Below are positions 8,822-33,238 of a stretch of 64,000 nucleotides of DNA, piece by piece. A model generated the notes under the pieces. That model was not told where the DNA came from and searched no databases. It saw only the letters and a list, made by a program, of their open reading frames with translations. The position numbers were made by a program, and so were the translations under genes. The number at the start of each line of letters is the position of its first letter. The stretch's first letter is position 1. The stretch is from positions 1 through 64,000 of the IMG/VR virus record IMGVR_UViG_3300035181_000471. The stretch is one strand, 5' to 3'.

Positions 8822-9103
8822 TCACTTGATACCGTCAAACTTAGAGTACAGGGCCTCAGCTTTTTGGAGGTTTCCGGCAAGCTTGTCCTTGGCTGTCGCT
8901 AGGGTCTGTGTCAGAGTTTCAAGAAGATCAGTTAACTGATCTTCGTCCATTTTATCAACATCGTAACCATCGGCCTTTAGAGATGCGGTGAGTTCCCCAA
9001 CCTTATGCTCCTCTACAGCCAGAAGGCGCTTTAGGTCATCCTGCTTTTTGGTCAGCAGGGCGGCTTTTCTATTCAATTCATTTAGCTCTTCAGTGAGTCC
9101 CAT
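8822..9103 (-). CDS. coiled-coil protein (possible middle segment of split Rad50)
   Basis: Heptad-rich 93 aa starting right after the Rad50 zinc hook. Confidence 0.55.
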   Translation of the reverse strand: MGLTEELNELNRKAALLTKKQDDLKRLLAVEEHKVGELTASLKADGYDVDKMDEDQLTDLLETLTQTLATAKDKLAGNLQKAEALYSKFDGIK

Positions 9104-10376
9104 GTTCTTCTCCTAGTTGAAAAAAGTGACCGCATTCAGGGCATTCAACCCCATCGGTCTTAAGTTCGCTAATACCTTCCGACACTGTTTTATACTCGTT
9201 TTTAATGGTTTTCAATTCGGACTTGATACGGGCTACTTCTTTTACTGCTTTATTATAACGATTTATGAGCTTTATCTTACTTGAGGCATCTTCGATAGCA
9301 ACTTCCAGGGTATTCCATGAGCCGATACTAAGATCTGGAATCGTTAATGATGTTACCTTGAGTTTTAGAGCAATATAAGCCCGGATATCAGCAATTGTTT
9401 TAGCTTGCTTAATGAGAGGTTCTACCTTGTCCACTACAACGGTGGTGAGACCTGACATAGCCGACACTTTAGACTTGGCCGCTATGAGGCTAGAGATGCT
9501 GTTAACAGCCTTTGACTGAGCAATCAGGGTATCCGCCTTACCAATCGGCAATCGTGTCGCCTGGGCTAAGGTAGACACGAATTCCTTGCGCTTACGGTAA
9601 GCTGACAACTGCTTACCTATGGCTAGCACCTTTTCTGCCTTAGCGGTAGACGGAATTGGTATAGAAATGACTGTGGTCAGTACACCAACGAATTCCCTGG
9701 AGGAAGCCAGAGCCTTTAGCTCCTGAATTTTTGAATCGTAACGAGCGATATTTTCACTGATAGCATCGACATCTTCTTCTAGCTCAGAGAACTCATCAGC
9801 GATGATGCGAATCTCCTCTACTTTGCTCTCAGCTTCTTGAATCTCAATGGCTAGGAACTTAGCATTGGAGTTGAATTCTACATTCTTTGCTGCTGCGGCT
9901 TTCTTGCCAGCGTTCAGCTTTTCAGTTGAAGAGAACAAACCGAAGATAGAATTGAGTTCAGAAGGACTCATCTTCAGCATGAATTGGTCATCAAACTGAT
10001 CAGCGAAAACGGGGTCCAGCTTAACCCCGTTGATGTCTACTTCATTGCATCGCATGTCAGCAATAACTGGAGGTAGACCACCATTGAGTTTAGAAAACTC
10101 CTCATCACCGATCTTGTAGTTGACGGTTTTGGCGTTCCTAGTTAACTCAATAGTTTCCTGTCCTTCTGGTTCCAGTGTTACAGAAGTTTCCTTGGACCAC
10201 CAGCTAATGTGGTTAGCTCCTACTTCGTTACGAAGGATACCACATAGAGCGCGAATAATGGCCGACTTACCTCGGTCAGAGGGTCCAACGATTACCGTGA
10301 ATCCTTTGACCGATAAATCTAGAGCCTTCCAAGACTGGAAGTTTCTAGCTGTTACCTTGAATACCTTACCCAGCAT
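9090..10376 (-). CDS. Rad50/SbcC/gp46-like ATPase, N-terminal half
   Basis: RNFQS, Walker A GPSDRGKS, Q-loop DQFD, coiled coil ending in CPEC hook; no Walker B. Confidence 0.88.
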   Translation of the reverse strand: MLGKVFKVTARNFQSWKALDLSVKGFTVIVGPSDRGKSAIIRALCGILRNEVGANHISWWSKETSVTLEPEGQETIELTRNAKTVNYKIGDEEFSKLNGGLPPVIADMRCNEVDINGVKLDPVFADQFDDQFMLKMSPSELNSIFGLFSSTEKLNAGKKAAAAKNVEFNSNAKFLAIEIQEAESKVEEIRIIADEFSELEEDVDAISENIARYDSKIQELKALASSREFVGVLTTVISIPIPSTAKAEKVLAIGKQLSAYRKRKEFVSTLAQATRLPIGKADTLIAQSKAVNSISSLIAAKSKVSAMSGLTTVVVDKVEPLIKQAKTIADIRAYIALKLKVTSLTIPDLSIGSWNTLEVAIEDASSKIKLINRYNKAVKEVARIKSELKTIKNEYKTVSEGISELKTDGVECPECGHFFQLGEEHGTH

Positions 10377-11205
10377 CAGACACCTTTATCTTTTTAATTT
10401 TACTGGGATCTGCTTCAAGTTCTTTCGCTAGATCAAGTTTGTCCAACTGTAGAGCCAACTTTAGAACTGCTACCTTGGTCCAATAGTTAGGTCTCGCCAA
10501 GTTTAGGGCCATGAGTAAGTGAGTGAAGTCCTCAGCAGGATCTTCACTAAACTCAAATTGGATTGGACTATCGTAAAGAGTAGTTGGGAACACCGTGTCA
10601 ATTCCGTATGAACAACCGAATGGATCATTTAAAAATCCCTGACGGCCACTTGACCAAGTGTGAGATCGAATGCATTGACCACCTGGGAGAGCAAAGTAGA
10701 AATCGGTCTCTTTTTTATTGGAGTAGAATCTGAATGGTAGCTTGTTTTTGATTGGCTTCTTACCAGCCATTCTTTCAGCCATCCCAATCCACGCTGAGTC
10801 TTCTGGAACTAGAAGTTGCTGGCTACCGTCCATTACGAAGCGGAAGGTTCCGGGGATGCCACCACCGGGAGTGATGCCGATACGCTTAATGATGTCTAGC
10901 ATGACACGCTCTCGCAGATCATACATACATCCGTATTGATCAACAACCTTGTAGGCTCTACCACCCTCTTCTCTGGACTCCAGATCAATGATGGAGATTT
11001 TCAATCCGCCATTAGGTCTGGTGGTGGGTCTTGGGTTATTGTTGTTTCTAGTAGTGGCCCAGTCCCTAGCTCTTTCGTTCTGCTTAGCATTCCCCGACCC
11101 CACAGCAAAGCAGGATCGGAGAGTTAGCTTACCGCACACAGGAGAGTTATAAACTCGCTCTGGCTGTGCATAGACATTCAGTAGATCAGGGTTCTTGTCG
11201 CTCAT
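10366..11205 (-). CDS. hypothetical phage protein
   Basis: 279-aa ORF. Confidence 0.65.
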   Translation of the reverse strand: MSDKNPDLLNVYAQPERVYNSPVCGKLTLRSCFAVGSGNAKQNERARDWATTRNNNNPRPTTRPNGGLKISIIDLESREEGGRAYKVVDQYGCMYDLRERVMLDIIKRIGITPGGGIPGTFRFVMDGSQQLLVPEDSAWIGMAERMAGKKPIKNKLPFRFYSNKKETDFYFALPGGQCIRSHTWSSGRQGFLNDPFGCSYGIDTVFPTTLYDSPIQFEFSEDPAEDFTHLLMALNLARPNYWTKVAVLKLALQLDKLDLAKELEADPSKIKKIKVSDAG

Positions 11206-11213
11206 AGCGATCC

Positions 11214-12452
11214 TTATAGGTCATCGTCATCGAAGTCGGTAATGCGAATGGCATCCCCACTCTCAAGGCTCTCAGAGTCGCCAGCGAGGAACTTCTCAGC
11301 CGGACTGATCTCAGCGGTGTAAGCGCCATGATCTTCGTTGACGGCATCAATCACTAGCAGACGAAGGCGACCTAGAATCTCATAATCTGGCTCAGTTACG
11401 AGGTTACGAATAGCCTCATCCTTGGAGTCAAACACGATAATAGGCTTCTCTTCATCACCGACGATATAACGCTTGCCCTTGTTAGTGATAAGGCCATACT
11501 TACGAGCTAGTTCACGAACAGAGATCCAGTCGTCAATTCCGAGACCGGGACGAAGCCAGAGGTGGAATTCACGATAACCACCAGTGGTGATCTTGTTCTT
11601 CAGAATACGAACCTTGACCTTCGTGGCAACATAGTCGCCCTTGTTATCCCCAGGCTCAAGAATGAAGGGATCATCAGCATATCCTCCAGCGCGGAAAGCC
11701 TTGGCAACATTGACTTCGATCATCTCAGAAGGGACGAAGCGAACACTGTTACCACCTGGGAGGGTGTAGTTAAGATTGGTGATAGAGGGGTACTTGGAAG
11801 CCATCATAGCTTCGTTGGTCATCTCGATTCTAGCACGAATCTGGTTAACCATCAGGAACAAGCAGTCGTACTTGATGGCGTAAGGAAGCGTGAGGTCAAA
11901 GAACTTCTGCATACCTCTGGCGTGTTCACCAACGGAAGCCTTGAAAGCAGCACCATTGAGAATTTCCTTTTCATCAACCATAGACTTCATGCGAGGGATG
12001 GAGTCGAATACGAACAGCTTGACGCCAGCCTTCATCAGAGTAATGGTCTGCTTGATTGCCTCTTCCACGGAGGAAGGACGGAAGACCACGAGAGAGCCAC
12101 GACTAGTGTCTACACCAATCTTACGGAGGTAGTCACCAGTTGCCGTGCCTTCAAAGTCGAAGATAGCCACAGGCTCGTCCTCAACTCTCTGATAGGACTT
12201 CACAGACGAATAGCAGATGGTGGATTTACCACCGTGTTCCTTGCCGTGAATGTGAATTACACGACCACCGCGAGGCATACCACGAAGACGGAGAACATCG
12301 TCAAGGACGATGGACCCGAATGGGGTAAACTTCTCTTCCGCATCACACTGTAACATTGTGGATTCGTCTAATACGCTGAGAGCTTCAAGGAAAGCGGCCT
12401 TCCTGTCTGAAGTGTTGAATTCGACATTCTTCATTGTTCTAGTTTTTGCCAT
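11214..12452 (-). CDS. recA: RecA/UvsX recombinase
   Basis: G...LD, GKEHGGKST Walker A, FVFDS, VNQIR, PGG, KNK motifs. Confidence 0.93.
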   Translation of the reverse strand: MAKTRTMKNVEFNTSDRKAAFLEALSVLDESTMLQCDAEEKFTPFGSIVLDDVLRLRGMPRGGRVIHIHGKEHGGKSTICYSSVKSYQRVEDEPVAIFDFEGTATGDYLRKIGVDTSRGSLVVFRPSSVEEAIKQTITLMKAGVKLFVFDSIPRMKSMVDEKEILNGAAFKASVGEHARGMQKFFDLTLPYAIKYDCLFLMVNQIRARIEMTNEAMMASKYPSITNLNYTLPGGNSVRFVPSEMIEVNVAKAFRAGGYADDPFILEPGDNKGDYVATKVKVRILKNKITTGGYREFHLWLRPGLGIDDWISVRELARKYGLITNKGKRYIVGDEEKPIIVFDSKDEAIRNLVTEPDYEILGRLRLLVIDAVNEDHGAYTAEISPAEKFLAGDSESLESGDAIRITDFDDDDL

Positions 12453-12461
12453 GAGTGGCTC

Positions 12462-13259
12462 CTATATGTTAACTTCAAGTTTTTCAAGACGCTTCTTAGG
12501 GGGAATCCTGGCGTCCTTAATACTAATACTGTAGGTTTTGGTCTCGTACTTGAACCAGTAGTTAGGATTGTAAAGAATCCCCTTTTTGATGATCTTCTGG
12601 TTGCGTCCTTTACCCTTTACAACATCAGAGAAGTCACACAAAGCAAGCATAACTTTCTCCGGCATGGTCTTGATATCTTGGCCTAAGAATAGATCACTAG
12701 CATGACGGCCAAACTGACCCAATAAGACTGCATCGCAGGCGTCTGAATCAATCCCTGGATACTCAATTGCATTGGCGTATTCGTGCGCCTTACGGATGTT
12801 CTCGTGTTTATTATTACCCTTCTCCACTAGGCCAAGGCAAGAGCGCAGGGTCATAGCATTGATATGCATGACACACACTTCCTTGAAGGCGTGAGTGACT
12901 GAAGGTAGGACTTTGGATTGGATGATTTTGTTTACAATGTTGAGCCAGTCGTTGCCTGGAGTTGGAGCTTCAAGTGAAATAATCAGGCCCTTCTCAGAGT
13001 CAGCGTGAGCCAGGATAGAGGTGGTGATAAAATCAGCCATCATCACAGAACGAACCCACACGGGATAACTAGAATCGGCTGGCTTCAAGGATTTAATTAG
13101 TTCCCACTTAGGGCCATCAACGGTGTTTGTCATGACCGCTAGTCCTGTTCTGCTTAGCGAGGGGTCAATGCCGACAATCACCCATTCATTCATGTCTCTT
13201 GGAGTAGGGATTTTTACTTTGTCATCGAAGGTTAGTTTTGGTTTTGCTACTCTTGCCAT
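12462..13259 (-). CDS. RuvC-like Holliday junction resolvase
   Basis: IVGIDPSLSRTG, ISLE, DACDA acidic residues. Confidence 0.8.
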   Translation of the reverse strand: MARVAKPKLTFDDKVKIPTPRDMNEWVIVGIDPSLSRTGLAVMTNTVDGPKWELIKSLKPADSSYPVWVRSVMMADFITTSILAHADSEKGLIISLEAPTPGNDWLNIVNKIIQSKVLPSVTHAFKEVCVMHINAMTLRSCLGLVEKGNNKHENIRKAHEYANAIEYPGIDSDACDAVLLGQFGRHASDLFLGQDIKTMPEKVMLALCDFSDVVKGKGRNQKIIKKGILYNPNYWFKYETKTYSISIKDARIPPKKRLEKLEVNI

Positions 13260-13277
13260 GTCTACTCCAAAAAATTA

Positions 13278-13308
13278 GGAGCTACACGACAACTCATCGT
13301 GTAGCTCC
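13278..13308 (-). terminator. intrinsic terminator after the SSB gene
   Basis: 12-bp inverted repeat GGAGCTACACGA followed by a T-tract on the minus strand. Confidence 0.7.
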
Positions 13309-13324
13309 CGGTCTTACTGAGGGA

Positions 13325-14098: not shown

Positions 14099-14125
14099 TG
14101 TCGGCCTCCTTGTGATTGTTATTAC

Positions 14126-21351: not shown

Positions 21352-24300
21352 CTACTCATCCTCTTTTTCTGACTGATCGTCAGCGTCATAGCAAGAATCA
21401 CTACAGAATACTTCCATATCTCCACTTCTGACTAGCACTTCAGAAGGATTTAGAATGGGTTTGTTACAATAATGGCAAGTTGGGTATTCATCCCTAGCCC
21501 ATTCCAAGGTGGGTTCAGATAGATCCTGCAAGGACCAAGTGTCTACGAGATCTTCGAATAGAGTTAGAGGATCGACATGGTTGGTGCGAGTAACATAATC
21601 CCAGCTAATCTGCTTTGGATCAGTGAAAATAATTCCTCTGGTTAGGACTTTTTCTAGTTTCGGGTCCACATTGGCTGTTTCCATCGCGTTAGTAAATTCT
21701 TTGTAGTTTTCTGGGGTCAGGTAAATGAGGCTGTCATATTGACGAGGTTCCAGCTTGAAAAGACGGAGGCTATGAGTTAGAAATTCAGAAGATGCGTAAC
21801 TATCATAGGCCCAAAGGCTATCTAGCCATGTTGGGCAGAGCTTAAAGGCATCAACTAGAGTGAACGAAGGCTTAGCTCTCTTTACATCTTCGATGAGGGT
21901 AGCTCCGAAAGAGGTCTTCCATACAGCTCTAGACATATCGTCAATTAGGTCTTTCACCTTATGGTAGATGAACCCGCCTTTAATAAGGCGATTAACCTCA
22001 GGGTCATGTTCTCCTACAAACTGCATGTATTCCCAGTAAGTATCGTTAGCAACCCAGTAGGCTTGAACATCTTCACCGTATTCCCCGACATAAATTCTAT
22101 CTCCGAGATCTCCGCTCTTGGTATTTTGGCACTCAATATAGTCAAGATCAGGGCAATAGATTTGAGCTAGTTTATCAGAAGTATCGTCTGCGGGTGCAGT
22201 AGGGTCAGCATCTTGGGTGATTACATAAAGAGGGCCGGATTCTAAGTAATTCCTGGAGGTTCTTTCACCTTGAGTACACCAATTGGTGCCTTGTGACATG
22301 ATAACAGAAGCCTCGGGAGTAGTGATTCTGTAGAGAATGAGATCCCCTCTGCGTCCGACTACTTCGCATCCTTCTCTAAAGTATTTATCCCTCTGTCTGT
22401 CGATCTCTTTTCTCTGCTCGTTCTTAGATAGATCAGATCTTGTAGCGGAGGCTACTGCGTTGACTAGAGACTCGTAGTGATACTGATTGATGTCCCCGGA
22501 ATTGAGTTCTCTAAATGGAGTGCCTGGACGCTTGAGCATCGAGAATCTCTCAAGGAGGGCCGTAACCTCCCCAGCATTAGGAGCGTTGGGGTTCACGATG
22601 GAGCGAAGGGCCAATCTCTTGTTTTTATACTCTCTGCATAGCCAATCAACATACTCTCCATTAGGAGATGAGTCGATGCTATCCATTGCACCAACAACGG
22701 ATTCAGGAATGCCATACTTCTTCACTAGGGCATCATGCTTAGCCTTAGAGATAGCGGCCATTTTCTTACGAGAGGTCTTTGCAGAAGTTACCTTGAATGT
22801 GAAATCGGGATTGAGGTACCCGCCACGAACTAGTGAAGCTTTGATGTCACGGATACCCCAGCTAGACTCAAATTCTCCCTGAACATAGTCAAAGGCCCCA
22901 TCACGGAAATCCGACTCACCATCCTGATTGATAGCTTCGACTAGTGGAGCCACAAGATCTCTGGCCTTTTCAAACAAGTCCAGTGGGACACCGGGGTATA
23001 GTGACTCTCTTCTTGCATCTCCAGCACGAATAGCGCCGTTGATTGAGCTAAGATGCCATCTGATGTCTACGGTATCGAGGTCGATAGGAGCTTCGGTGTG
23101 GCTTTCATTATAAATGTCCACAGCCCTTTTTGTCACTTCAAAATACTTCTTCAGCGGTGACCCAGGTGAAGTCTTCAACTTCTCCCACTCTTTTTGTGCT
23201 TTTTCAGCTTTATCCTTGAATTCCTTGCTTTCTTTAGCTTCTTCTTGTTCAATTACATCGGAGAACGGAGCGAAGATCTCATCAATAGACTCCTTAATGA
23301 ATTCATCTCTAACCTCATCCCAACAGCTATCGCAATAGGATTCTCCAGCAGCTTGTAAAAAGTGCATATCATCGGAATCATAGCTCTCGCCACAACGAGG
23401 GCAATACTCTCTCTGAGCATCATTATAGCAATCGTCACACAGCATCTCGCCATTGTACTCGTTTAGGTCACGAGCCTCAAATTCACCCCCACAGTTATCG
23501 CAAGTAGCCTCATCCCTAGGGATTTCATCTCTGTTCTGAGAGATGGTGTGATCACTAATGTAGTCATTGATTATCTCGTCATGATGCGATAAGAATTCAA
23601 AGAACTTCCAGTATTCTGGCTTGTTGACCCAGTATCCACCACCTACATTACGACCTACATCTCGGCCATCTACATCCTGAGCTTCAATGCGACTTGGCTC
23701 ATCAGGAACGAAAATCTGAAGGAACTTGTCATCGTTATAGCTATTTTTGGCTTCACTCCCAGGCAGAGTAAAGATGTAAAGCGGGGCCATAGCTAGGTAG
23801 CCTGGACCATAGGCGGTTCCTCGGGTACACCAGTGAGTGTTCTTGCCTAGAATTTCAGAGGCTTGCATGGTGGTAACCCTGAAACAAAGATACCCACCCT
23901 CTACTTCACCTAAATATTCGCTGCCTTCTGTCAGATATTTTTGCTTGTTCTTTTCTATGTCTTCTTTGCGCTTGCGCTCCTGTTCCTTCTTGGACATATC
24001 TTCATTCGTAGTGGCCTCCATAGCAGCCACAAGAGTTGAAACGGTGTAGGAGTTGATATCACCTGAATTGGTCTGTCTAAAGGGGGTTCCTGGCCTCTTT
24101 ACGATACTGAATCTCTGAAGAACGGAAGTGATGTAGTCCTCTCTCGCACCAGAGGATGCAATTTCACCCCTACTTTGGGCCTTGCAGAGCCAGTCGGTAT
24201 ACTCCCCATTGGGTGTTGGATCAATATTAGACAAGGTTTCAACCAGAACGGGGTCTAGCTTGTATTTTTTAGCCAGGGCGTCTTTCTTAGCCTGGGATGC

Positions 24301-26040
24301 GGCTGCGTCTTTGATCAGAAGTCCGTTGTTCCAGGAGGATTCCTTGAGATGAAAGGTTCCATCCTCATTTAGATAGTCATACAACACCAAGATAGATCTG
24401 ATGTCTCTGTTTTTAGAATCAAAATCTCTTTTCACATCATCAATGGCTTCATCAACTAGATGCTCAAAGTTTTCCTCAATTCGTGTATACAGGGGATTCA
24501 GGGTATCATAGACTTTGACAAATTCTTCTTCGGAGATTCCAGGGTAGATTCTAGCTCTGTTCTCATTTGATGTCCAGGACGCAGAACGAGCGGTGGCTAA
24601 TTGCCAACTAATTCGTGCCATAATTTCAGGTGAGATTTTATCATAGATAGCTCTACGACCATTTAGATCTTTAACTATATCTCTGATTTTCTGGAAGTAG
24701 CTAGCTAAGGGGGAGTCTGGGCTATTGTATAGATTATCCCACTCTTCTTCGGCCTCCTCGCTATCTGCGTTCACTTGTGGTTCAAAGGGGGATAGGAGAC
24801 TGACCACAGTCTCCTTAATATAATCGTAATTGGCGTCTTTGAAGCACTCTTCTGAGCAAAAAGTCTTATGAGTTCTACTGTCTGGGACTCCATCTTCCAG
24901 TCTAAAGGTACTATCACAATAGTCACATACTTTTCTCCCATCCCAGTAGTCTTCCTCTGTTTTACAGATGGTGTTGTCTTCGATGTAATTTTTGATGACT
25001 GGATCAAACTTAGCGATGAATTCAAAAAGTTCCCAGAATTCACTTCTGGACACTATATACCCATCGTCTAGGTGTTCACCCAAGTCATCGCCATTGATGT
25101 CCTGGCATTCAATTCTGTCAGGGTGATGGCTTGGTGCAAAGATCTGGCAGAACTTATCACTAGCATAGTCTTCGTTGTCTTCACCAGGAGTTGTGACTAC
25201 ATAAAGAGGACCGTACTTTAGATAGCTAGCGGCGTAGCCCTCCCCCTTTGTACACCAGTGGGTGTCCTTGGATAGCACCTGAGATGCTTCCACGGTGGTA
25301 ACCTTGTAAACTCGGAATGGTCCGGTATCACCTAGAAGCTGACTCCCTTCAAGTGCATATTTATCCTGGTTTTGGTTCAAGTCCCTTTCTTTTTCTTTCT
25401 TGGAAAGATCGGCTCTGGAGGCAAGATCCATCTGGCGAAGGAACTCAGCAATGCTGTAGCGGTTAATGTCGGTCTGGTTCCCTAGTCTCCACTGAGGACT
25501 GTTCTTTAGCTTTTCAAATAACTCTAGCTTGCCCCTCAAGTCAGCCTTGAGAGTATCTGGTGTCTCGTTGTGACTGATGTAGTATTTGTACGCCTTACAA
25601 ATCCATTCCGTATAAGCACCATTAGCTGTTGGATCAATGTCAGCGATGAAATCAAGCTCGTCTTTAGATAGCCTGTATTTTGTCATCAGGGCGTTCTTCT
25701 TGGCGTCTGAAGCGGCGGCTAGAATAATGTGAGAAGCGGTCTTCTCTACGAGCTTCCCAGCATTGGAGCCGACTCGGGTCATCTCAAAGTCGTATTCGGC
25801 TAGATTGGCTCCGATTTCAGCCACATCTCCAAGGGTCCTGTTGTAGAAAGGTAGAGTCTTAAGCTCTCTAATTGCGACACCTACAATAACTGAACTCCTG
25901 AAGATTCTAGGAATAGAGCCGTTATTATACAAGTGCTGAACCCAGTAATAAAGGAATTGGGGCAGCACACTGGGATCGGTAACTTTGAACTTAATCGTGT
26001 TTCCGATAGCCGTAGCTAGTTTTGATTCAAATTCTAACAT
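21352..26040 (-). CDS. large triple-repeat protein with Zn ribbons
   Basis: Three copies of IDP/S..NG.Y..W.C...DIN.Y...TT..AS......T.WCT.G...YL..[GA]PLY...QI...IE.Q, separated by CxxC clusters. Confidence 0.75.
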   Translation of the reverse strand: MLEFESKLATAIGNTIKFKVTDPSVLPQFLYYWVQHLYNNGSIPRIFRSSVIVGVAIRELKTLPFYNRTLGDVAEIGANLAEYDFEMTRVGSNAGKLVEKTASHIILAAASDAKKNALMTKYRLSKDELDFIADIDPTANGAYTEWICKAYKYYISHNETPDTLKADLRGKLELFEKLKNSPQWRLGNQTDINRYSIAEFLRQMDLASRADLSKKEKERDLNQNQDKYALEGSQLLGDTGPFRVYKVTTVEASQVLSKDTHWCTKGEGYAASYLKYGPLYVVTTPGEDNEDYASDKFCQIFAPSHHPDRIECQDINGDDLGEHLDDGYIVSRSEFWELFEFIAKFDPVIKNYIEDNTICKTEEDYWDGRKVCDYCDSTFRLEDGVPDSRTHKTFCSEECFKDANYDYIKETVVSLLSPFEPQVNADSEEAEEEWDNLYNSPDSPLASYFQKIRDIVKDLNGRRAIYDKISPEIMARISWQLATARSASWTSNENRARIYPGISEEEFVKVYDTLNPLYTRIEENFEHLVDEAIDDVKRDFDSKNRDIRSILVLYDYLNEDGTFHLKESSWNNGLLIKDAAASQAKKDALAKKYKLDPVLVETLSNIDPTPNGEYTDWLCKAQSRGEIASSGAREDYITSVLQRFSIVKRPGTPFRQTNSGDINSYTVSTLVAAMEATTNEDMSKKEQERKRKEDIEKNKQKYLTEGSEYLGEVEGGYLCFRVTTMQASEILGKNTHWCTRGTAYGPGYLAMAPLYIFTLPGSEAKNSYNDDKFLQIFVPDEPSRIEAQDVDGRDVGRNVGGGYWVNKPEYWKFFEFLSHHDEIINDYISDHTISQNRDEIPRDEATCDNCGGEFEARDLNEYNGEMLCDDCYNDAQREYCPRCGESYDSDDMHFLQAAGESYCDSCWDEVRDEFIKESIDEIFAPFSDVIEQEEAKESKEFKDKAEKAQKEWEKLKTSPGSPLKKYFEVTKRAVDIYNESHTEAPIDLDTVDIRWHLSSINGAIRAGDARRESLYPGVPLDLFEKARDLVAPLVEAINQDGESDFRDGAFDYVQGEFESSWGIRDIKASLVRGGYLNPDFTFKVTSAKTSRKKMAAISKAKHDALVKKYGIPESVVGAMDSIDSSPNGEYVDWLCREYKNKRLALRSIVNPNAPNAGEVTALLERFSMLKRPGTPFRELNSGDINQYHYESLVNAVASATRSDLSKNEQRKEIDRQRDKYFREGCEVVGRRGDLILYRITTPEASVIMSQGTNWCTQGERTSRNYLESGPLYVITQDADPTAPADDTSDKLAQIYCPDLDYIECQNTKSGDLGDRIYVGEYGEDVQAYWVANDTYWEYMQFVGEHDPEVNRLIKGGFIYHKVKDLIDDMSRAVWKTSFGATLIEDVKRAKPSFTLVDAFKLCPTWLDSLWAYDSYASSEFLTHSLRLFKLEPRQYDSLIYLTPENYKEFTNAMETANVDPKLEKVLTRGIIFTDPKQISWDYVTRTNHVDPLTLFEDLVDTWSLQDLSEPTLEWARDEYPTCHYCNKPILNPSEVLVRSGDMEVFCSDSCYDADDQSEKEDE

Positions 26041-26863: not shown

Positions 26864-26868
26864 AGATC

Positions 26869-27954
26869 CTACTTTCTCTGTCCTAGAATTCGGACGAAGT
26901 TGAGACAGCCAGTGGCAGTAGAGTCAAGAGGAGTGGCTGACTGACGAGCCTCAGGATTGACTTTGAAGCGAACATCGAGATTAGACATGAAGACCTCATT
27001 GAAGAGTTTCATGAAGCCGGGAGCCTTAGTGGTGCCACCAGAGATAACAACTGGAATAGTTTCAGGAATCTCGGTGCGGTTACCATTCATGGCGAAGAAA
27101 GTATTGACTGCGGCAGTCAGCTTAGCTAGAAGCTCCTGATACATCATTCCAATGGCTTCGGCCTGACGATCAGTCTTGGTGTCATCGGAATCAGCCTTGG
27201 TAGTCACCTTACCAGTATAGGCATCAACACCACGCTCCTTCAGGAGAGTAATGTGAGACACCACGGAATCAGTGGCTTGTGCGGCAGAATTGTCGATAAA
27301 GTCACCACCAAAAGGTAGCGAGAACGAACGAACTGGTAGACCCTTGTAGAGTAAGCAGACATTCGTCATGCCAGCACCGAAAGAGATGAAAAGTCCGGTC
27401 AGCGGAATCTCACCCTTCTTAGGCGTGACGGTTTCAGCGTAGCCAATTGCGGCGGCTTCATTCAATGGCTTAGCGGTGAACCCTAGTTCAGTAATAAGGC
27501 TTTTGAAGAAGCTGGTGTGGAATGCTAGGCCAGTGTCGTTGCTTGGTTTCCAGCCCTCAGGCTTCTCGTAGTCAAAAATGGGGCCAGGAACGGAAAAGGC
27601 CACTAGTTCTTTATCCACTTCAGGCTTACCTAGAATCTGGGATAGGATAAGCTGTAGGATCTCCTTGCCGTCCTCTTCCTTGGGGCTAATGAAGCCCTTG
27701 GATAGTGGTCTACGGAGTTCACCACCCAGCACACCAACTAGGTTGATGGCATCGTTACCCACAACAAATAGCTCATTGGAGCCTTCGATGTATTCCACAC
27801 CGGAGATATCCAGGGTGGAGGAATGCTCTAGGGGGAGAGCAAGGAAGCAGTCTCTCACGGAAGACAGATTAACAGTCTTCTTCTGGTCAGACTTAGCGGA
27901 TACGATATAGGCAGTTCCGATATCGACACCACGACCATTAATTACTTCAGCCAT
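26869..27954 (-). CDS. actin-like ATPase (MreB/FtsA/ParM superfamily)
   Basis: GVDIGT, PLNEAAA, SFGAGMTN, GGD, ISGGT motifs. Confidence 0.88.
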   Translation of the reverse strand: MAEVINGRGVDIGTAYIVSAKSDQKKTVNLSSVRDCFLALPLEHSSTLDISGVEYIEGSNELFVVGNDAINLVGVLGGELRRPLSKGFISPKEEDGKEILQLILSQILGKPEVDKELVAFSVPGPIFDYEKPEGWKPSNDTGLAFHTSFFKSLITELGFTAKPLNEAAAIGYAETVTPKKGEIPLTGLFISFGAGMTNVCLLYKGLPVRSFSLPFGGDFIDNSAAQATDSVVSHITLLKERGVDAYTGKVTTKADSDDTKTDRQAEAIGMMYQELLAKLTAAVNTFFAMNGNRTEIPETIPVVISGGTTKAPGFMKLFNEVFMSNLDVRFKVNPEARQSATPLDSTATGCLNFVRILGQRK

Positions 27955-27956
27955 TT

Positions 27957-29057
27957 TTATTTCTCCTTAGAAGGGCTCACTACACCATCTTTTACATCTA
28001 GTTTAATTACGGAATTGCGCTTGGATGCCTTAGGGTCACTCTCGGATTTGAGGGGGATCATATCATCCGTGTCTAGTTCTTTAATACTCTTTGGGGAGAT
28101 CCTCCATTGCTCACCATACAAAGAAATTACATCTTTATACGACTTGACCTTTGGGTCATCCTTAAATAAAGTCTCCATAATGATCTGTTTGAGAACGAAG
28201 TAGAGTATGAAAATACTTTTTGGCTTTTTGATGTTTTGGTTCTTAATCTCATCGAGTATGGCGAGGATCATGACCTTGGGGTCTTTCACACCATCATACA
28301 TCAGTCTCTTAGCAATGGCTGTGATGGTCTTTTGGCGACCATACTTGATCTTCTTTTCTTCAACATTGTCCTCTGTATCTTCTTCAAAGACAGGAACTTC
28401 CAACTTAAATTTAAGGTCTTGCTGAAGCATCAATAGGGCTTCTTCCTCGTATTCCTGAACATACTCTTTCACCACATCCGAGTAGTAGAACACTTGCTGT
28501 TCAGGTGGGACACTTGACAAATCCTTGAGATTGTGAATGGGGGTCTCAATGAGAAGCCTGCGGGTCTTTAGCTCCACCATAACAAGGGCGTAATCCCTTT
28601 CAAGACTAACGACCTTACCACAGAAGCCACGGTCTAAGCCGTCAAGGATACGGACGAATGATCCGACTGAGATGCCTGTTGGGGCCATTCTAAAGGAGTC
28701 TTCACACTCTTTGATGAGTCCCTGTACATACTCGTCATCCACGGTTAGGGCCTTATCAATCCTCTGTTGTTCCCCATCACACAGGATTCCAAGCACACCA
28801 GTAATGGTACGGAACTTGGTAAGCTCCTTCTTGGAGGTAGAACGAATGAAGATATAGCTGGAAGTCTTTAGGGTATACACACCTAAATCACGCTCACCAA
28901 CAGGAATGAACACCTCACAGGCACCATCTTTAATGATGTCCTGGAGGGAGTTACCTATTCGTCTAAGGATGTTTTCGGCGGTCTTTTCGGAGCGAATCTC
29001 CATTAAGTGCCATTTTTGGCCCTGTAACTTGCTAACATCGCCATAAGTTAAAATCAT
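27957..29057 (-). CDS. NusG/RfaH-family factor with C-terminal extension
   Basis: NGN (WHL..EVFIP..SYIFI..ITGV) plus KOW (VGSFVRILDG..GF.GKV). Confidence 0.8.
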   Translation of the reverse strand: MILTYGDVSKLQGQKWHLMEIRSEKTAENILRRIGNSLQDIIKDGACEVFIPVGERDLGVYTLKTSSYIFIRSTSKKELTKFRTITGVLGILCDGEQQRIDKALTVDDEYVQGLIKECEDSFRMAPTGISVGSFVRILDGLDRGFCGKVVSLERDYALVMVELKTRRLLIETPIHNLKDLSSVPPEQQVFYYSDVVKEYVQEYEEEALLMLQQDLKFKLEVPVFEEDTEDNVEEKKIKYGRQKTITAIAKRLMYDGVKDPKVMILAILDEIKNQNIKKPKSIFILYFVLKQIIMETLFKDDPKVKSYKDVISLYGEQWRISPKSIKELDTDDMIPLKSESDPKASKRNSVIKLDVKDGVVSPSKEK

Positions 29058-29059
29058 TA

Positions 29060-30085
29060 TTACTCCACTACTTCAGCATTACATAGTCTAGCAAACTCCG
29101 ATGCTCCAACTTCCCATACGGGCTGTTGTTTTTTGGTTGCAACCTGAGTAGTTACACCAGTTTGACTGGACGCTACTACTTCATCAGATTCAGCTAGCTC
29201 CTTCAAAAGAAGGGGGAGACAGTTAGAAGGGAGGGAGACTCCGCTCTTCCATTTGAGGAATATGTCTGTCATCTTTCTATAATTACTCAGATTTGAACAA
29301 ATTCCTTCGAATATAGGGGAATCATTTCTATTGAAAACAGCATTTGAGTAAGCCGAAAGCAGACCATCAATGATGTCCGTAGTAGAGTAGGATAACTCTA
29401 GTTTGTCTAAGGCGTTGATGGCACCAGAGAAATTGGGGACCAATCTGGAAAGAATGGCGTTACACCCCGCCTCAAGTTCTACGGGAGCTACGGCGGAAAC
29501 TGACTCAGCGGTAATCGGACCCTGTAGGCTTACTGCCTGAAGAAATTTTATTCCCTCTTTAGGTACCCCTTTTGTCAACTTGGCAATGGCCCCTAACGCA
29601 CTCAACTCGTAAGAGATGTCGTGTTCAGCACAAATCCTAGACAAGAACCCCATCATCTCGTCCTGAGTCAGTTTGGATAACTGGACTCTATAAGCACGGG
29701 TTTTGATTTGAGGTGGAAGCTTGAAATAGTCTGAAGTGATGAAAACAAAAACAGGGTGAGGTTTAGTCCCATCGTGAATATTACAGATGGTGTCCCAGGA
29801 TTCTTTTGGAATACGAACCGCTTCTTCGAAAATGATTGGTGAAGATCCAAGATCTCCCCACTCTGGAATTTCACTATAAGCATTAGGATTGAATTTCTTT
29901 GGAGCCGTCCCAGTCAGTTCTTTCAGGAAGAACTTAGCCAGCGCAGTTTTACCCACGCCACTGGCACCTTCAAAAATATAAAGCTGGGGAGCCATGTCCT
30001 TCTTGTCAAGAATAGCCCTAAGTGTATTGAGGGCTACCTTGTTGCCGACCATATCACTTAGGGTTTTTGGTTCGAAAAAGCTCAT
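29060..30085 (-). CDS. DnaX/RFC-like clamp-loader subunit
   Basis: PKTLSDMVG, GASGVGKT, FIT, IKTR sensor; start trimmed to MSFF (TAATG). Confidence 0.82.
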   Translation of the reverse strand: MSFFEPKTLSDMVGNKVALNTLRAILDKKDMAPQLYIFEGASGVGKTALAKFFLKELTGTAPKKFNPNAYSEIPEWGDLGSSPIIFEEAVRIPKESWDTICNIHDGTKPHPVFVFITSDYFKLPPQIKTRAYRVQLSKLTQDEMMGFLSRICAEHDISYELSALGAIAKLTKGVPKEGIKFLQAVSLQGPITAESVSAVAPVELEAGCNAILSRLVPNFSGAINALDKLELSYSTTDIIDGLLSAYSNAVFNRNDSPIFEGICSNLSNYRKMTDIFLKWKSGVSLPSNCLPLLLKELAESDEVVASSQTGVTTQVATKKQQPVWEVGASEFARLCNAEVVE

Positions 30086-31386
30086 TAGCTCTCCATTACT
30101 TCCTTGACCAAGTTCAGATAGCGGAACAAGGAGGTGTTCATTCCGTAATACCACATTTGCCAGTAAGTCTTGATGTCAAGAGCTTCATCATTTTCCTTCA
30201 GGTATTGCTTGAGGGTGTGCTTGAAGTTTTCCAGATTAATACCCTTAACGATGAAGCCAGGACACTCAGAGATGTAGGTATTACTAGTAACTTCGATGGA
30301 GAAGTCCTTGACCAGCACTTGCTTGGTCCCAGTGGCCGTAGTCTTGTCAAACAAGCGGCAGAAGGTCATAGGCGCACTGGAAAGCAGTAGCTCCTGGTTG
30401 TCGTCGTTGAGAAGCTCAGTGGCCTCGTAGGGGGTTCTGAGGGTCACTGTGGAGGCTACGGTAGGGGCCAGACGAACTGCGAGAGGGCCACCAAAGGCTA
30501 GGAACTCCTCTGAGTTACCTTCATCCATAGGAGTGAAGGCAAAGAAGTTCTTGAGGATCTTCTCAAGAGCGGGGGACTCATTAGGCTCAACACCCTGGAC
30601 TCCGTGCATCTTGATCTCAGCGGCTCTGGCGTTAAATTCGTCCTGATAGATGGTCTTGTCTACCTGCTTGCGTAGGAAAGTCTCAGTCCACTGTGGCTGT
30701 TCAATGCCGTAGTCTTCTTCAGGACGATAGTCGAGGAGGGGGACATCCAGTGAAGCCAGGACCGCAATGAGGTCCACTACAGCGTTCTTAGAAGCGGAAT
30801 TGAACCACACACGCTTGAGGTTGAAGTCGATGATAACCTGATACTGCTTTCTGACGATAGTGTCAGGGTCTTCCACGGATTCTGAAATCTGTTTCTTGAC
30901 CTCGGCTGGCTGGAACTTAAATGGAGAACCATAGGAGTAAGCCTGGGCCTCACGCTTGGAATTCATGTCATGAACATCTTCCCAATCAAAGTTTACGAAC
31001 CAGAGAGCGTACACACCCTCAGCAATCTTCCAGTTGTCGGTGTTGCCATCCCACAATGCATTCTCAGTGAGATCCAGGCTACCATGAGTATCAGAGATGG
31101 TGTTGGTAGCTTCATCATAGAGCCACTCGCGGCTATGGAACGAAGTGAGTAGAGCCTCAATGGGAGTGGGGTCGGTGGACTTCTTGAAGAGGACTTCTTC
31201 GACATCACCAAGACGAGGAGAGTAGAAAGGTGCGATGCCGAGAGCATGGCCCTTAGTAATGCGGGATTCAGACTTAGCCATAGTAGGCATGAGTGCGAAG
31301 CCATCAGAAGCCAGCTTCTGCTTGAAGGCATCTTCCTCAGATTCGATATTGAACACCGTCCAGGTGCCTTTTGAAAACATAGTCAT
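30085..31386 (-). CDS. RdgC-like recombination-associated protein
   Basis: N-terminal F..W.VF...KLA...F and IIDF...VWFNSAS..A.DL...L resemble RdgC as recalled. Confidence 0.5.
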   Translation of the reverse strand: MTMFSKGTWTVFNIESEEDAFKQKLASDGFALMPTMAKSESRITKGHALGIAPFYSPRLGDVEEVLFKKSTDPTPIEALLTSFHSREWLYDEATNTISDTHGSLDLTENALWDGNTDNWKIAEGVYALWFVNFDWEDVHDMNSKREAQAYSYGSPFKFQPAEVKKQISESVEDPDTIVRKQYQVIIDFNLKRVWFNSASKNAVVDLIAVLASLDVPLLDYRPEEDYGIEQPQWTETFLRKQVDKTIYQDEFNARAAEIKMHGVQGVEPNESPALEKILKNFFAFTPMDEGNSEEFLAFGGPLAVRLAPTVASTVTLRTPYEATELLNDDNQELLLSSAPMTFCRLFDKTTATGTKQVLVKDFSIEVTSNTYISECPGFIVKGINLENFKHTLKQYLKENDEALDIKTYWQMWYYGMNTSLFRYLNLVKEVMES

Positions 31387-31421
31387 TTACTTCTCCTTAG
31401 ATGGTAGTGCGGGGGAGTGAC

Positions 31422-32135
31422 CTACTCCAGTCCTTCTAATACTCGTTGAAGGGCGTCTTTTTTCACTCTGGTTTGAAGACAGTCGGATGGATCAGAGGCA
31501 GGACACTCCAATGGGACTACCTGCATGGTCTTAATGATGTTAGACAATACACCCATAGATTTCTTGCCAGCTTCATCATTATCGTAAAGGAGATAAGTGG
31601 TCCTAACTCCAAGAATACGAAGGTATTCCTCATGCTTGCGGCCAATAGACTTAGTGAGAGAAGACATGATGGGAATGCCGGGTGCCACGGCTCTTGCGGC
31701 TAGGATATCAAACGGCCCTTCGACCAGAACGACATACCCCTTTTCAAGAATCAATTTCAAGGTTTCTTCATCGTTACCAAGCCAAATGGGTCCAGCGAAA
31801 TCTTCTCGCTTAGCTCCGATTGAATAGTATTTACCTGGACCAAACATTGTGTGAAGTGGCTTGGTCTGCGCTCTCAGAAGTCCGTCTACATCAACCTCTG
31901 GAAATAGGAACATAGGGCCGGGGAACATCTTTTTAGGAACATAAAGGACCCCTAAATCTTTGATCACCGGCATAAGCTGTTCGGGTTTGATCACCCAAGA
32001 CCTCTCTTCGATGATTCTGGTGGCGGTAATCAAAATGGGGTCTTTTTCCAGCTTGGTATAGATCGCCACTGTCTTCTCGATCAGCTTAGCGATATCCTGC
32101 CACCAACCTTCTTCAGCTTTAAGTTTTAGGGGCAT
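31422..32135 (-). CDS. DNA primase TOPRIM/catalytic part
   Basis: KY, LVEGPFD, YDNDEAG, DPSD; no zinc-binding domain. Confidence 0.85.
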   Translation of the reverse strand: MPLKLKAEEGWWQDIAKLIEKTVAIYTKLEKDPILITATRIIEERSWVIKPEQLMPVIKDLGVLYVPKKMFPGPMFLFPEVDVDGLLRAQTKPLHTMFGPGKYYSIGAKREDFAGPIWLGNDEETLKLILEKGYVVLVEGPFDILAARAVAPGIPIMSSLTKSIGRKHEEYLRILGVRTTYLLYDNDEAGKKSMGVLSNIIKTMQVVPLECPASDPSDCLQTRVKKDALQRVLEGLE

Positions 32136-32184
32136 CAAATCCTCTCATTTTAATGAGACATTCCTTTAAACCCGATCTCTGTCA

Positions 32185-32619
32185 TTAAACACCTTCCAGT
32201 TGATCAGGAATATTTCGTTGCTCTACATTGGCGATTAGATTCTCTTTGGTGCTTTCGTATTCTGCTGGGTCGTCAAACTGACTTAACACCCATAGGAGCG
32301 TAGCGACATCACGGTATTCCCGGAGCATTCTCTGTGTGTTTCGGATGTCATCTGCGAAGTCCTGGGAAAGCTCTTCTTTCGTCCTGGAGGGGTGGAACAA
32401 GCTAGCATTGAGACAGTTGTCAGGGTCAGTAGTGCCACATTTAGTGCATTTGTAGCAATCAAGTTCTTCATTGTAGACCACATAGGCACAGTTCTCCCCT
32501 TTAGGTTTTAGCTTGTTTTTATAGAATCTCTTACGGTGGCGCGAGATTAGATCCTTCAATCTGGTTAGGATTTCCTTCGCGGTCTTAACCTTGATTCTTA
32601 TGGGTGGATTTGAGTTCAT
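32185..32619 (-). CDS. hypothetical Cys-rich protein
   Basis: C..C.C..C..C cluster. Confidence 0.6.
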   Translation of the reverse strand: MNSNPPIRIKVKTAKEILTRLKDLISRHRKRFYKNKLKPKGENCAYVVYNEELDCYKCTKCGTTDPDNCLNASLFHPSRTKEELSQDFADDIRNTQRMLREYRDVATLLWVLSQFDDPAEYESTKENLIANVEQRNIPDQLEGV

Positions 32620-33238
32620 CTAGTTCTTCCTGGCGAAGCTCTCTGAGGAGCGGCCCGTTTTCGACTACATAGACGCGATCTGCTGAGACAGCGAGTCCAT
32701 GCGCTTGTGTGATGGACATTACACAATACCCATAATCATCACAAAGCGTTTTGATCATTTCTGAAACTTTTGGTAGGAATTCCGGGCTTACATTGTTGAA
32801 TGATTCATCTAAGACGATGAGTTTAGCCAACTTAAATCGCTGGATCATGATCACACGGAGCAGAAAAGAAATTACATTAACGATTCCGCCACCCACGGTT
32901 CCGATTGGGGGAGCTACGAAGCCGTCCTTCTCCAACATGATTCTATAGGAATCTCCCTTAGCACCCTCTTTTCGTTCAATGATTAACTTGTAATCTGAGT
33001 CGAAAATGAGCTTAAGTCCGTCTGACACAACTGTTTCGATCTTTCCGATGCCGTTGGCAGAGATGATCTGAATGGCTTTATCCATTACTCCGATGGCCTT
33101 GACATGCGCCGCCTTACTAGCTTCTATACCTTTTATTTTGAGCCTGTTACGAGCAATGAGGGCTTCTTGGCTAGTCAGCATCGACAGCACTTCGGCCTTC
33201 CTAGCCTTAAATTCAGCTACTTCTTCCTTGCAATACAT
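32585..33238 (-). CDS. Rad50/SbcC/gp46-like ATPase, C-terminal half
   Basis: Short coil, signature VGGG, Walker B LIVLDESF, H-switch ITQ, ADRVY. Confidence 0.85.
   Translation of the reverse strand: MYCKEEVAEFKARKAEVLSMLTSQEALIARNRLKIKGIEASKAAHVKAIGVMDKAIQIISANGIGKIETVVSDGLKLIFDSDYKLIIERKEGAKGDSYRIMLEKDGFVAPPIGTVGGGIVNVISFLLRVIMIQRFKLAKLIVLDESFNNVSPEFLPKVSEMIKTLCDDYGYCVMSITQAHGLAVSADRVYVVENGPLLRELRQEELDELKSTHKNQG

What the first reader, a model, noticed from the sequence alone, without database searches (positions are those of the whole stretch)
8822..33238. Rad50/SbcC split at the zinc hook into genes 22 kb apart, possibly three pieces
Seen: 9090-10376 has Walker A, Q-loop and coil and stops just after CPEC. 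32585-33238 has only a short coil, VGGG signature, Walker B and H-switch. The returning coil is much shorter than the outgoing one, and a 93-aa coiled-coil ORF (8822-9103) starts right at the hook. No intein motifs were seen. Inference: an ATPase assembled in trans from 2-3 chains, working with the Mre11-like gene at 6643.
Basis: partly seen in the sequence, partly recalled or inferred. Interest (0 to 1): 0.6.

Follow-up and report, generated by a model that had tools for sequence, protein, structure and literature searches.

The report
Phage Rad50 encoded in separate genes
This large phage, like a widespread group of related phages, encodes the DNA-break-repair ATPase Rad50/SbcC as separate genes cut exactly after the zinc hook and lying far apart, so the enzyme most likely has to assemble from two or three chains.

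Summary
ORF 9090-10376(-) (428 aa) has Walker A, a Q-loop region and a long helical arm, and stops 13 residues after CPEC. ORF 32585-33238(-) (217 aa) has a short coil, a GGG signature and Walker B. A 93-aa ORF starts inside the last codons of the N-half.

It is not an artefact. Contigs from two independent runs cross the stop without change. All 58 N-half homologs end 4-23 residues after CPxC. All 120 listed C-half homologs are 189-252 aa and lack Walker A.

Five 99-100% complete relatives (300-456 kb) each have one N-half, one small ORF just downstream of it, and one C-half 17-132 kb away, with no intact SbcC. In other phages the pieces lie within a few kb (0305phi8-36 gp8/gp7/gp5; L056).

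Rad50 is the best solved-structure match for both halves, including the zinc hook. The C-half fold matches the C-terminal chains of engineered two-chain Rad50/SMC heads.

The small ORF is a family of its own (about 100 clusters). It is predicted, weakly, to bind the N-half (ipSAE 0.49, best control 0.00).

Verdict: a naturally split Rad50, apparently undescribed. The third chain is plausible but not shown, and N-C binding is inferred, not scored.

The parts
9090..10376 (-). Rad50/SbcC N-half (428 aa): ATPase lobe I, helical arm and C-terminal zinc hook
   Evidence: Pfam AAA_23 5e-8 and phrog_16465 'exonuclease'. The PDB profile search hits the P. furiosus Rad50 hook 6zff_A (E 0.0025) and Rad50 N-lobes. 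Foldseek matches SMC/Rad50 N-lobes. AF2 gives pLDDT 67.
10263..10286 (-). Walker A, GPSDRGKS (residues 31-38)
   Evidence: G31, G36, K37 and S38 are invariant in alignment A1. The motif is present in 58/58 homologs.
9132..9143 (-). CPEC zinc-hook motif (residues 412-415), 13 residues before the stop
   Evidence: C412, P413 and C415 are invariant. The motif aligns with CPVCG of the P. furiosus Rad50 hook. CPxC lies 4-23 aa from the C-terminus in 58/58 homologs.
8822..9103 (-). 93-aa helix-turn-helix protein, translationally coupled to the N-half; candidate third chain
   Evidence: It overlaps the N-half by 14 nt and has an AGGAG SD. The same ORF follows the N-half in L003 (Tunturi_5 gp180), L008, all six read of L014-L024, L055 and G001-G005. 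The family has 110 representatives, about 100 of them standalone and 64-120 aa long. The complex score is 0.49 against a best control of 0.00.
9090..9103 (-). 14-nt overlap between the N-half stop and the small-ORF start
   Evidence: Contigs of runs X2 and X3 span it with no differences or gaps.
32585..33238 (-). Rad50/SbcC C-half (217 aa): short coil and ATPase lobe II
   Evidence: phrog_15167 'ATPase' 2e-15. The best PDB profile hit is M. jannaschii Rad50 3aux_A, 6e-6. AF2 gives pLDDT 85. Foldseek matches 1xew_Y, 1ii8_B and 1f2u_D.
32885..32899 (-). Signature motif TVGGG (residues 114-118)
   Evidence: G117/G118 are invariant and G116 nearly so. The motif aligns with LSGGE of Rad50.
32804..32821 (-). 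Walker B, LIVLDE (residues 140-145)
   Evidence: D144 and E145 are invariant.
6643..7653 (-). Mre11/SbcD-like nuclease (336 aa), the partner of the split Rad50
   Evidence: Pfam Metallophos 1e-5, and the nuclease motifs are visible. A homolog lies in the N-half module of every relative examined.

Best explanation
The window belongs to a large (jumbo-type) phage whose Mre11-Rad50 (SbcCD, T4 gp46/47-like) DNA-end-processing complex has Rad50 encoded in pieces.

The N-half carries Walker A, the Q-loop, a helical arm and a CPxC zinc hook at its very C-terminus. The C-half, encoded 22 kb away next to the primase genes, carries a roughly 50-aa coil, the signature motif, Walker B and the rest of lobe II.

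Inferred mechanism:
- The two chains fold together into one ABC-ATPase head. The C-half coil pairs antiparallel with the base of the N-half arm, and this creates the site where Mre11 docks.
- Two such heads dimerise on ATP.
- Two N-half tails share a zinc ion through their CPxC motifs.

The 93-aa protein made from the overlapping downstream ORF probably binds the N-half arm. It may supply part or all of the missing 'returning' strand next to the hook.

Shown here: the gene structure, the complementarity of the motifs, the conservation, the co-occurrence and the fold matches. Inferred: physical assembly, zinc binding, activity, and where the small protein sits.
For: - The two ORFs carry complementary motif sets with no overlap.
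- Each half independently has Rad50 as its best solved-structure relative: the N-half matches the Rad50 zinc hook and N-lobe, the C-half matches the Rad50 coil base, signature and Walker B.
- The C-half model (pLDDT 85) matches the C-terminal chains of engineered two-chain Rad50/SMC heads (1xew_Y, 1ii8_B, 1f2u_D). Such halves are therefore known to assemble in vitro.
- There is a single copy of each piece in the 221-kb record.
- Five genomes 99-100% complete each have one N-half, one small ORF just downstream of it, one C-half 17-132 kb away, and no intact SbcC.
- The complete isolate genomes Tunturi_5, 0305phi8-36 and Magritte show the same. In Magritte the single Pfam SMC_N model is shared between two genes 93 kb apart.
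- The pieces are neighbours elsewhere: 0305phi8-36 gp8, gp7, gp6, gp5; L056 has N-half, Mre11, PDDEXK, an 81-aa ORF, a clamp, then the C-half; L053.
- All 58 N-half homologs stop 4-23 aa after CPxC.
- Independent contigs confirm the junction.
- For the small ORF, the complex score is ipSAE 0.49 (runs 0.48-0.50) against a best control of 0.00, including the control in which the N-half was replaced. Partner pLDDT is at least 77 and the runs agree in at least 81% of contacts. The tool's verdict is 'weak support'. Its mark was reached by 58 of 80 solved complexes and 2 of 110 mismatches, but only 7 of those 80 solved complexes, and both mismatches, passed with scores of 0.60 or under.
Against: - No experiment supports it. 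The N-half/C-half interface was not itself scored, because the single complex job scored only the small ORF.
- The N-half alone folds with low confidence (pLDDT 67, pTM 0.28).
- The D-loop Asp is Ser in the whole family, and the canonical H-loop His is Gln in this phage and its nearest relatives, so ATPase kinetics may be unusual.
- The arm is about 110 aa longer than the small ORF and C-half coil together can cover.
- The small-ORF profile finds no similarity to the post-hook coil of any intact Rad50, in 1.84 billion representatives or in the PDB.
- The window's own record is only 77% complete.
Confidence: 0.78

Rival explanations
1. Rad50 here has only two chains. The 93-aa protein would be an accessory factor or regulator of the Mre11-Rad50 module, or an unrelated small gene like T4 46.1/46.2. 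It would not be a structural replacement for the returning coiled-coil strand.
For: Its profile matches no Rad50/SbcC post-hook region. In L053 and L056 it is separated from the N-half by Mre11 and a PDDEXK nuclease. The complex verdict is only 'weak support' and no interface is given. Its helix-turn-helix shape is not a simple continuous coil.
Against: It stays inside the Mre11/Rad50 module in every lineage seen, including 0305phi8-36 gp7. It is translationally coupled to the N-half. Its predicted binding is lost when the N-half is replaced. In the short (311-aa) N-halves, an arm of about 150-160 aa roughly equals the small ORF (81 aa) plus the C-half coil (about 65 aa) (inference).
Confidence: 0.35
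2. The two halves are not partners. The N-half would act alone as a non-catalytic scaffold or hook protein for Mre11, and the C-half would serve the adjacent primase/replication module with another ATPase.
For: In 21/21 loci of this clade the C-half is locked next to a Cys-rich 144-aa gene and a Toprim primase, never within 8 kb of the N-half. The N-C interface was not scored.
Against: Neither half is a complete ABC domain, and no other Walker-A SMC-type lobe exists in the record or in the complete relatives. The halves co-occur one to one in 5/5 complete genomes. They lie within 2-5 kb of each other in 0305phi8-36 and L056. Both have Rad50 as best PDB hit.
Confidence: 0.07
3. The split is an artefact or is repaired: a misassembly, a sequencing frameshift, a pseudogene, or pieces joined by an intein, trans-splicing or ribosomal recoding.
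For: In most relatives the small ORF is in the +1 frame relative to the N-half (calculated from the coordinates).
Against: Contigs of independent runs cross the junction unchanged. The truncation is conserved in 58/58 homologs down to about 20% identity. The frame relation is not constant: in Tunturi_5 the small ORF is in the same frame after a stop, and in L022 it is in the -1 frame. The small ORF has its own SD and ATG. There is no Hint or intein domain, only 13 aa follow the hook, and the C-half begins directly with coil. The C-half gene lies 22 kb upstream of the N-half in the direction of transcription.
Confidence: 0.02

Closest known systems
Rad50-Mre11 / SbcCD / phage T4 gp46-gp47
   Same: An ABC-ATPase head with Walker A, Q-loop, signature motif and Walker B; a helical arm; a CPxCG zinc hook that aligns with the P. 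furiosus hook; a partner Mre11 phosphoesterase gene; and a position in a recombination module beside a UvsX/RecA gene.
   Different: Known Rad50 and SbcC are single polypeptides whose two ATPase lobes are joined by one intramolecular antiparallel coiled coil. Here the chain ends 13 aa after the hook and lobe II is a separate gene 22 kb away. The signature is GGG rather than SGG, the D-loop Asp is Ser, and the H-loop His is displaced.
Engineered two-chain Rad50 and SMC head domains (PDB 1F2T/1F2U, 1II8, 3QKR, 1XEW, 3KTA)
   Same: Separate N- and C-terminal chains together form a complete head. The natural C-half superposes on the C-terminal chains (TM by target 0.53-0.70), and the N-half on the N-terminal chains.
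   Different: Those are laboratory truncations without arms or hook. Here the split is natural and ancient, it retains the arm and hook, and it comes with a conserved third small protein.
Bacillus phage 0305phi8-36 gp8 (Mre11/Rad50 fusion), gp7 and gp5
   Same: It belongs to the same split family. gp8 ends just after a CPTC hook. gp7 (92 aa) shows the same helix, 'MGYD' turn, helix pattern as the 93-aa ORF. gp5 matches the C-half (BLASTP 7e-9).
   Different: There Mre11 is fused to the N-half and all pieces lie within 4.5 kb. Yoshida et al. 2011 (PMC3175470) noted that one P-loop NTPase segment 'was not observed' in gp8 but did not identify gp5 as that segment. Direct BLASTP of gp7 against the 93-aa ORF is not significant, so the likeness is one of pattern.
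Other enzymes split between distant genes in jumbo phages (RNA polymerase beta/beta', minimal DNA Pol III alpha)
   Same: A single-chain cellular enzyme is encoded as separate proteins at distant loci and presumed to reassemble (Iyer et al. 2021, PMC7824862).
   Different: That survey treats SbcC as an ordinary, near-universal ABC ATPase of jumbo phages and reports no split.

Membership tests
Rad50/SbcC (SMC-like ABC ATPase of the Mre11 complex) | Walker A P-loop in the N-terminal lobe | tested here: met
   GPSDRGKS at residues 31-38; invariant in A1 and present in 58/58 homologs.
Rad50/SbcC (SMC-like ABC ATPase of the Mre11 complex) | Signature motif and Walker B with catalytic Glu in the C-terminal lobe | tested here: met
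   The GGG (116-118) aligns with SGGE of M. jannaschii Rad50, with Ser replaced by Gly across the family. D144-E145 are invariant.
Rad50/SbcC (SMC-like ABC ATPase of the Mre11 complex) | D-loop Asp and H-loop His (typical of ABC ATPases but not strictly defining) | tested here: not met
   The D-loop position is Ser151 in nearly all members. The canonical His ('ITHQ' in most members) is Gln178 here, with His180 nearby.
Rad50/SbcC (SMC-like ABC ATPase of the Mre11 complex) | CxxC zinc hook at the end of the outgoing helix | tested here: met
   The invariant CPxCG aligns with the P. furiosus hook structures 6zff and 1l8d (E 0.0025 and 0.018). Zinc binding itself cannot be tested here.
Rad50/SbcC (SMC-like ABC ATPase of the Mre11 complex) | One polypeptide whose lobes are joined by an intramolecular antiparallel coiled coil | tested here: not met
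   The chain stops 13 aa after the hook and lobe II is a separate gene. This is the feature that makes it a variant.
Rad50/SbcC (SMC-like ABC ATPase of the Mre11 complex) | Genomic association with an Mre11/SbcD nuclease | tested here: met
   The Metallophos gene at 6643-7653; Mre11 follows the small ORF directly in L018 and L023 and is fused to the N-half in 0305phi8-36.
Rad50/SbcC (SMC-like ABC ATPase of the Mre11 complex) | ATP-dependent head dimerisation and stimulation of the Mre11 nuclease | not testable with these tools
   This needs biochemistry.
Split intein / protein trans-splicing | Intein N- and C-fragments (Hint blocks) at the split ends | tested here: not met
   Pfam finds no Hint or intein domain. 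Only 13 aa follow the hook, and the C-half starts as a helix at residue 2.
PHROG families 16465 ('exonuclease') and 15167 ('ATPase') | Profile match | tested here: met
   E-values are 5.9e-12 and 1.9e-15. The profile lengths (491 and 211) show that both families are already half-length in PHROGs.

The most novel reading that the evidence does not exclude
A natural three-chain Rad50. A hook-terminated N-half, a 93-aa hairpin protein that supplies the strand returning from the hook, and a distantly encoded C-half would build a working Mre11-Rad50 machine without covalent continuity through the coiled coil.

That would mean hook-to-head communication does not need an unbroken returning helix. It would also make the arm architecture (a middle section of short helices, varying in length between relatives, with no same-length partner strand) unlike any described SMC-type protein.
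Probability: 0.4. Interest if true: 0.75.

Novelty: new variant of a known kind. Interest (0 to 1): 0.62.

Why it matters
Rad50 and SMC proteins are defined by one chain that folds back on itself through a long coiled coil. How the hook and coil signal to the ATPase head is still debated.

A widespread natural family that breaks the chain exactly at the hook, and adds a small conserved partner, offers a ready-made system for asking which covalent links matter.

It also has practical value for annotation. Hundreds of phage 'exonuclease', 'ATPase' and hypothetical genes would be recognised as parts of one machine. It explains the 'missing' ATPase segment of 0305phi8-36 gp8 noted in 2011. And it adds Rad50 to the list of core enzymes that jumbo phages encode as scattered pieces.

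Tried and rejected
- Megablast of the N-half region against 50,697 phage records found no match.
- The word search with the 93-aa ORF found only 3 proteins. The exhaustive profile search was needed.
- I tested whether the small ORF descends from the Rad50 returning coil. Its profile against 1.84 billion representatives returned only standalone proteins of about 90-105 aa plus repetitive long proteins, none of them Rad50/SbcC. Its profile against the PDB gave nothing significant and no hook structures. The Atlas returned only viral hypotheticals. Homology is therefore not shown.
- BLASTP of the small ORF against 0305phi8-36 gp7 was not significant; only the motif pattern is shared.
- The 419-aa gene between the small ORF and the C-half in L053 is not an N-half.
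- The second P-loop hits in the own genome and in Tunturi_5 are an AAA+ ATPase and a gene annotated as a DnaC-like helicase loader, not SMC-type. The weak second hits in the five complete relatives were not examined individually.
- Intein, frameshift and misassembly readings were rejected (see the rival explanations).
- The literature searches for a split Rad50 or SbcC found nothing relevant, but the library does not hold most subscription journals. The Tunturi_5 paper does not discuss these genes.
- The one complex job scored only the small ORF and gave no contacts, so it yields no verdict on the N-half/C-half interface.


Full report
**What is in the window**

The window is the first 64 kb of a 221,217-bp IMG/VR virus record, linear and 77% complete by CheckV. 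The DNA is present in sediment and microbial-mat metagenomes.

Nearly all long ORFs lie on the - strand. The finding spans a recombination module and a replication module.

- Recombination module:
  - UvsX/RecA, 11214-12452
  - a 279-aa ORF
  - the N-half, 9090-10376
  - the 93-aa ORF, 8822-9103
  - a Nudix-box ORF and two small ORFs
  - the Mre11-like ORF, 6643-7653
- Replication module:
  - a 950-aa PKD-domain protein
  - the C-half, 32585-33238
  - a Cys-rich 144-aa ORF
  - a Toprim primase, 31422-32138

Further on lie a Volactin-like actin, a family A DNA polymerase and an SNF2 helicase.

**The observation**

N-half (428 aa):
- Walker A is GPSDRGKS (residues 31-38), and Q127/F128 are invariant.
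- In the AF2 model, helices run at 151-237, 244-274, 281-308, 319-343 and 351-405.
- A beta hairpin then carries C412-P-E-C415, and the stop comes 13 residues later.

C-half (217 aa):
- It models confidently (pLDDT 85) as one helix (2-79) running into an ABC lobe II.
- It carries T114-VGGG118 and Walker B LIVLDE (140-145).

The canonical H-loop His ('ITHQ' in most relatives) is Gln178 here, with a His two residues later. The D-loop Asp is Ser throughout the family.

The 93-aa ORF begins 14 nt before the N-half stop and is preceded by AGGAG at a spacing of 6 nt.

**Not an artefact**

- Contigs from two other sequencing runs, each from a separate sample and study, span the stop/start junction with no differences and no gaps: X2 covers 7549-10267 and X3 covers 8590-9924.
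- A relative has the same gene order, the same 14-nt overlap, and both halves on one 34.8-kb contig. Its N-half is 52% identical and its C-half 80% identical to the window's.
- All 58 N-half homologs found (301-523 aa, down to about 20% identity) have Walker A near residue 28 and a CPxC 4-23 residues from the C-terminus.
- All 120 listed C-half homologs are 189-252 aa. None has a Walker A, and 118 show the signature followed by Walker B.
- PHROGs already holds the two as separate half-length families.

**Both pieces are Rad50**

- A profile of the N-half family has the P. furiosus Rad50 zinc-hook structure as its best PDB hit (6zff_A, E 0.0025, CPxCG aligned on CPVCG; also 1l8d). Rad50 N-lobes come next.
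- A profile of the C-half family has M. jannaschii Rad50 as its best hit (3aux_A, E 6e-6). The match covers the coil base and the signature/Walker B region.
- Foldseek places the N-half model on SMC/Rad50/RecN N-lobes.
- Foldseek places the C-half model on the C-terminal chains of engineered two-chain heads: 1xew_Y 7e-8, 1ii8_B, and 1f2u_D with TM 0.70 by target.

Those crystallographic constructs show that separately made halves of such heads assemble. This point rests on the PDB entries plus general knowledge of them.

**Are the two halves partners?**

Each half lacks exactly what the other has. Profiles of all three pieces, run over every ORF of at least 50 aa in the 221-kb record, find one copy of each. 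Pfam AAA_23, SMC_N and AAA_21 find nothing else apart from an AAA+ ATPase.

Because the record is incomplete, I checked complete relatives.

- Five IMG/VR genomes of 300-456 kb, 99-100% complete, that carry the C-half each have exactly one N-half. Each also has one small ORF just downstream of that N-half, and no intact SbcC.
- In these genomes the halves are about 17, 19, 36, 39 and 132 kb apart, in either order and, in one case, on opposite strands.
- The complete isolate genomes show the same: Tunturi_5 (halves about 108 kb apart), 0305phi8-36 and Magritte.
- In Magritte the single Pfam SMC_N model matches positions 1-54 in gene 155 and positions 152-216 in gene 2.

Gene neighbourhood links the pieces independently.

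- In 0305phi8-36 the order is gp8 (Mre11 fused to an N-half that ends at a CPTC hook), gp7 (92 aa), gp6, then gp5 (the C-half, BLASTP 7e-9).
- In L056 the order is N-half, Mre11, PDDEXK nuclease, an 81-aa ORF, a sliding clamp, then the C-half.
- L053 is similar.

In the window's own clade, by contrast, the C-half is fixed between the PKD protein and the Cys-rich gene plus primase in 21 of 21 loci. It never has an N-half, small ORF or Mre11 within 8 kb.

**The third piece**

- The ORF directly downstream of the N-half is 93-104 aa in the window, in L008, in all six of the loci L014-L024 that were read, in L055 and in Tunturi_5 (gp180, BLASTP E 0.003). It usually overlaps the N-half stop by 4-17 nt.
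- Its frame relative to the N-half varies (+1 in most, 0 in Tunturi_5, -1 in L022) and it has its own ribosome-binding site. This is translational coupling, not recoding.
- An exhaustive profile search gives 110 representatives. About 100 are standalone proteins of 64-120 aa matched end to end. The long hits are repetitive proteins unrelated to Rad50.
- The family shape is helix, a 'LK-x-LG(Y/I/V)D' turn, then helix. 0305phi8-36 gp7 shows the same pattern.

The single complex job folded N-half, C-half and small ORF together, with the small ORF as the scored partner.

- ipSAE was 0.49 (runs 0.48-0.50), against a best control of 0.00. One control replaced the N-half and also scored 0.00.
- Partner pLDDT was at least 77 and the runs agreed in at least 81% of contacts.
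- The tool's verdict is 'weak support'. Its mark was reached by 58 of 80 solved complexes and 2 of 110 mismatches. However, only 7 of those 80 solved complexes, and both mismatches, passed with scores of 0.60 or under. The counts are only rough here because my own alignments were used.
- No contacts were given.

Binding to the N-half is therefore plausible. The idea that the small ORF is literally the returning strand is inference.

**Arm-length bookkeeping (inference)**

- Short N-halves of about 311 aa have roughly 150-160 residues between the head and the hook. That is close to the sum of the small ORF (81 aa) and the C-half coil (about 65 aa) in L056.
- The window's N-half has about 110 extra residues in the middle of the arm (helices 244-343). 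Their length varies between relatives, and they have no same-length partner strand.
- How they fold is unknown, because the N-half model alone is of low confidence (pLDDT 67, pTM 0.28).

**Comparison with what is known, and novelty**

The system works like Mre11-Rad50, SbcCD or T4 gp46/47. It meets the motif, hook and Mre11-association tests. It fails the single-polypeptide feature and has family-wide D-loop and signature substitutions.

- Yoshida et al. 2011 noted that in 0305phi8-36 gp8 one P-loop NTPase segment 'was not observed', without finding it in gp5 (PMC3175470).
- The jumbo-phage survey of Iyer et al. 2021 describes split RNA polymerase and a split Pol III alpha but treats SbcC as an ordinary ABC ATPase (PMC7824862).
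- The Tunturi_5 paper does not discuss these genes.
- Four full-text searches found no description of a natural split Rad50 or SbcC. The library lacks most subscription journals, so this absence is provisional.

I rate the finding a new variant of a known kind. It is a real, ancient and widespread fission of Rad50 at the hook, with a conserved small third component.

**Limits**

Nothing here shows protein-protein binding, zinc binding or catalysis. The N-half/C-half interface was not scored.

Noticed in passing
window 26869-27954 (-): A 361-aa actin-fold protein matches Pfam Volactin (PF25216, 9e-46) and, weakly, MreB/FtsA. It is a phage-encoded actin-like protein inside the replication gene block and is conserved in the relative L011.
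   Followed up: partly
window 32185-32619 (-) and 31422-32138 (-): A Cys-rich 144-aa ORF overlaps the end of the C-half by 35 nt and is followed by a short (238-aa) Toprim-only primase. This trio is conserved in 21/21 related loci, and weakly in the distant L053. It may be a DnaG-type primase whose zinc-binding domain is a separate protein, which would be a second split enzyme.
   Followed up: partly
window 9090-9125 (-): This stretch is dual coding. The conserved 'GE-x-HG' tail of the N-half coincides with the AGGAG ribosome-binding site and the ATGGG start of the small ORF, so part of the tail's conservation may reflect the overlapping gene rather than the hook.
   Followed up: partly
window 9350-9650 (-), N-half residues about 240-345: The middle of the arm consists of short (25-31 aa) helices separated by loops (a nearly invariant Pro, P242, precedes the first). 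The length of this stretch differs between relatives; the 311-aa forms lack it altogether.
   Followed up: partly
window 10366-11205 (-): A 279-aa ORF (phrog_12487, unknown function) lies between UvsX and the N-half and overlaps the N-half start by 11 nt. It is present in L014 but absent from the closer relative L008.
   Followed up: no
window 21352-26040 (-): A 1562-aa ORF has no family match except an MYM-type zf-FCS zinc finger at its extreme C-terminus (residues 1521-1550, 1e-6).
   Followed up: no
window 7656-8737 (-): Between the small ORF and Mre11 lie a Nudix-box protein (8258-8737) and a 120-aa ORF (7656-8018) whose homolog in L008 has a weak hemerythrin hit. Other relatives have a dCMP deaminase, or nothing, at this position.
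   Followed up: no
L056 and L053 (related contigs): In a more distant clade a PDDEXK_1 (Cas4-like) nuclease and a beta-clamp gene are interleaved with the Rad50 pieces, in the order N-half, Mre11, PDDEXK, small ORF, clamp, C-half.
   Followed up: partly
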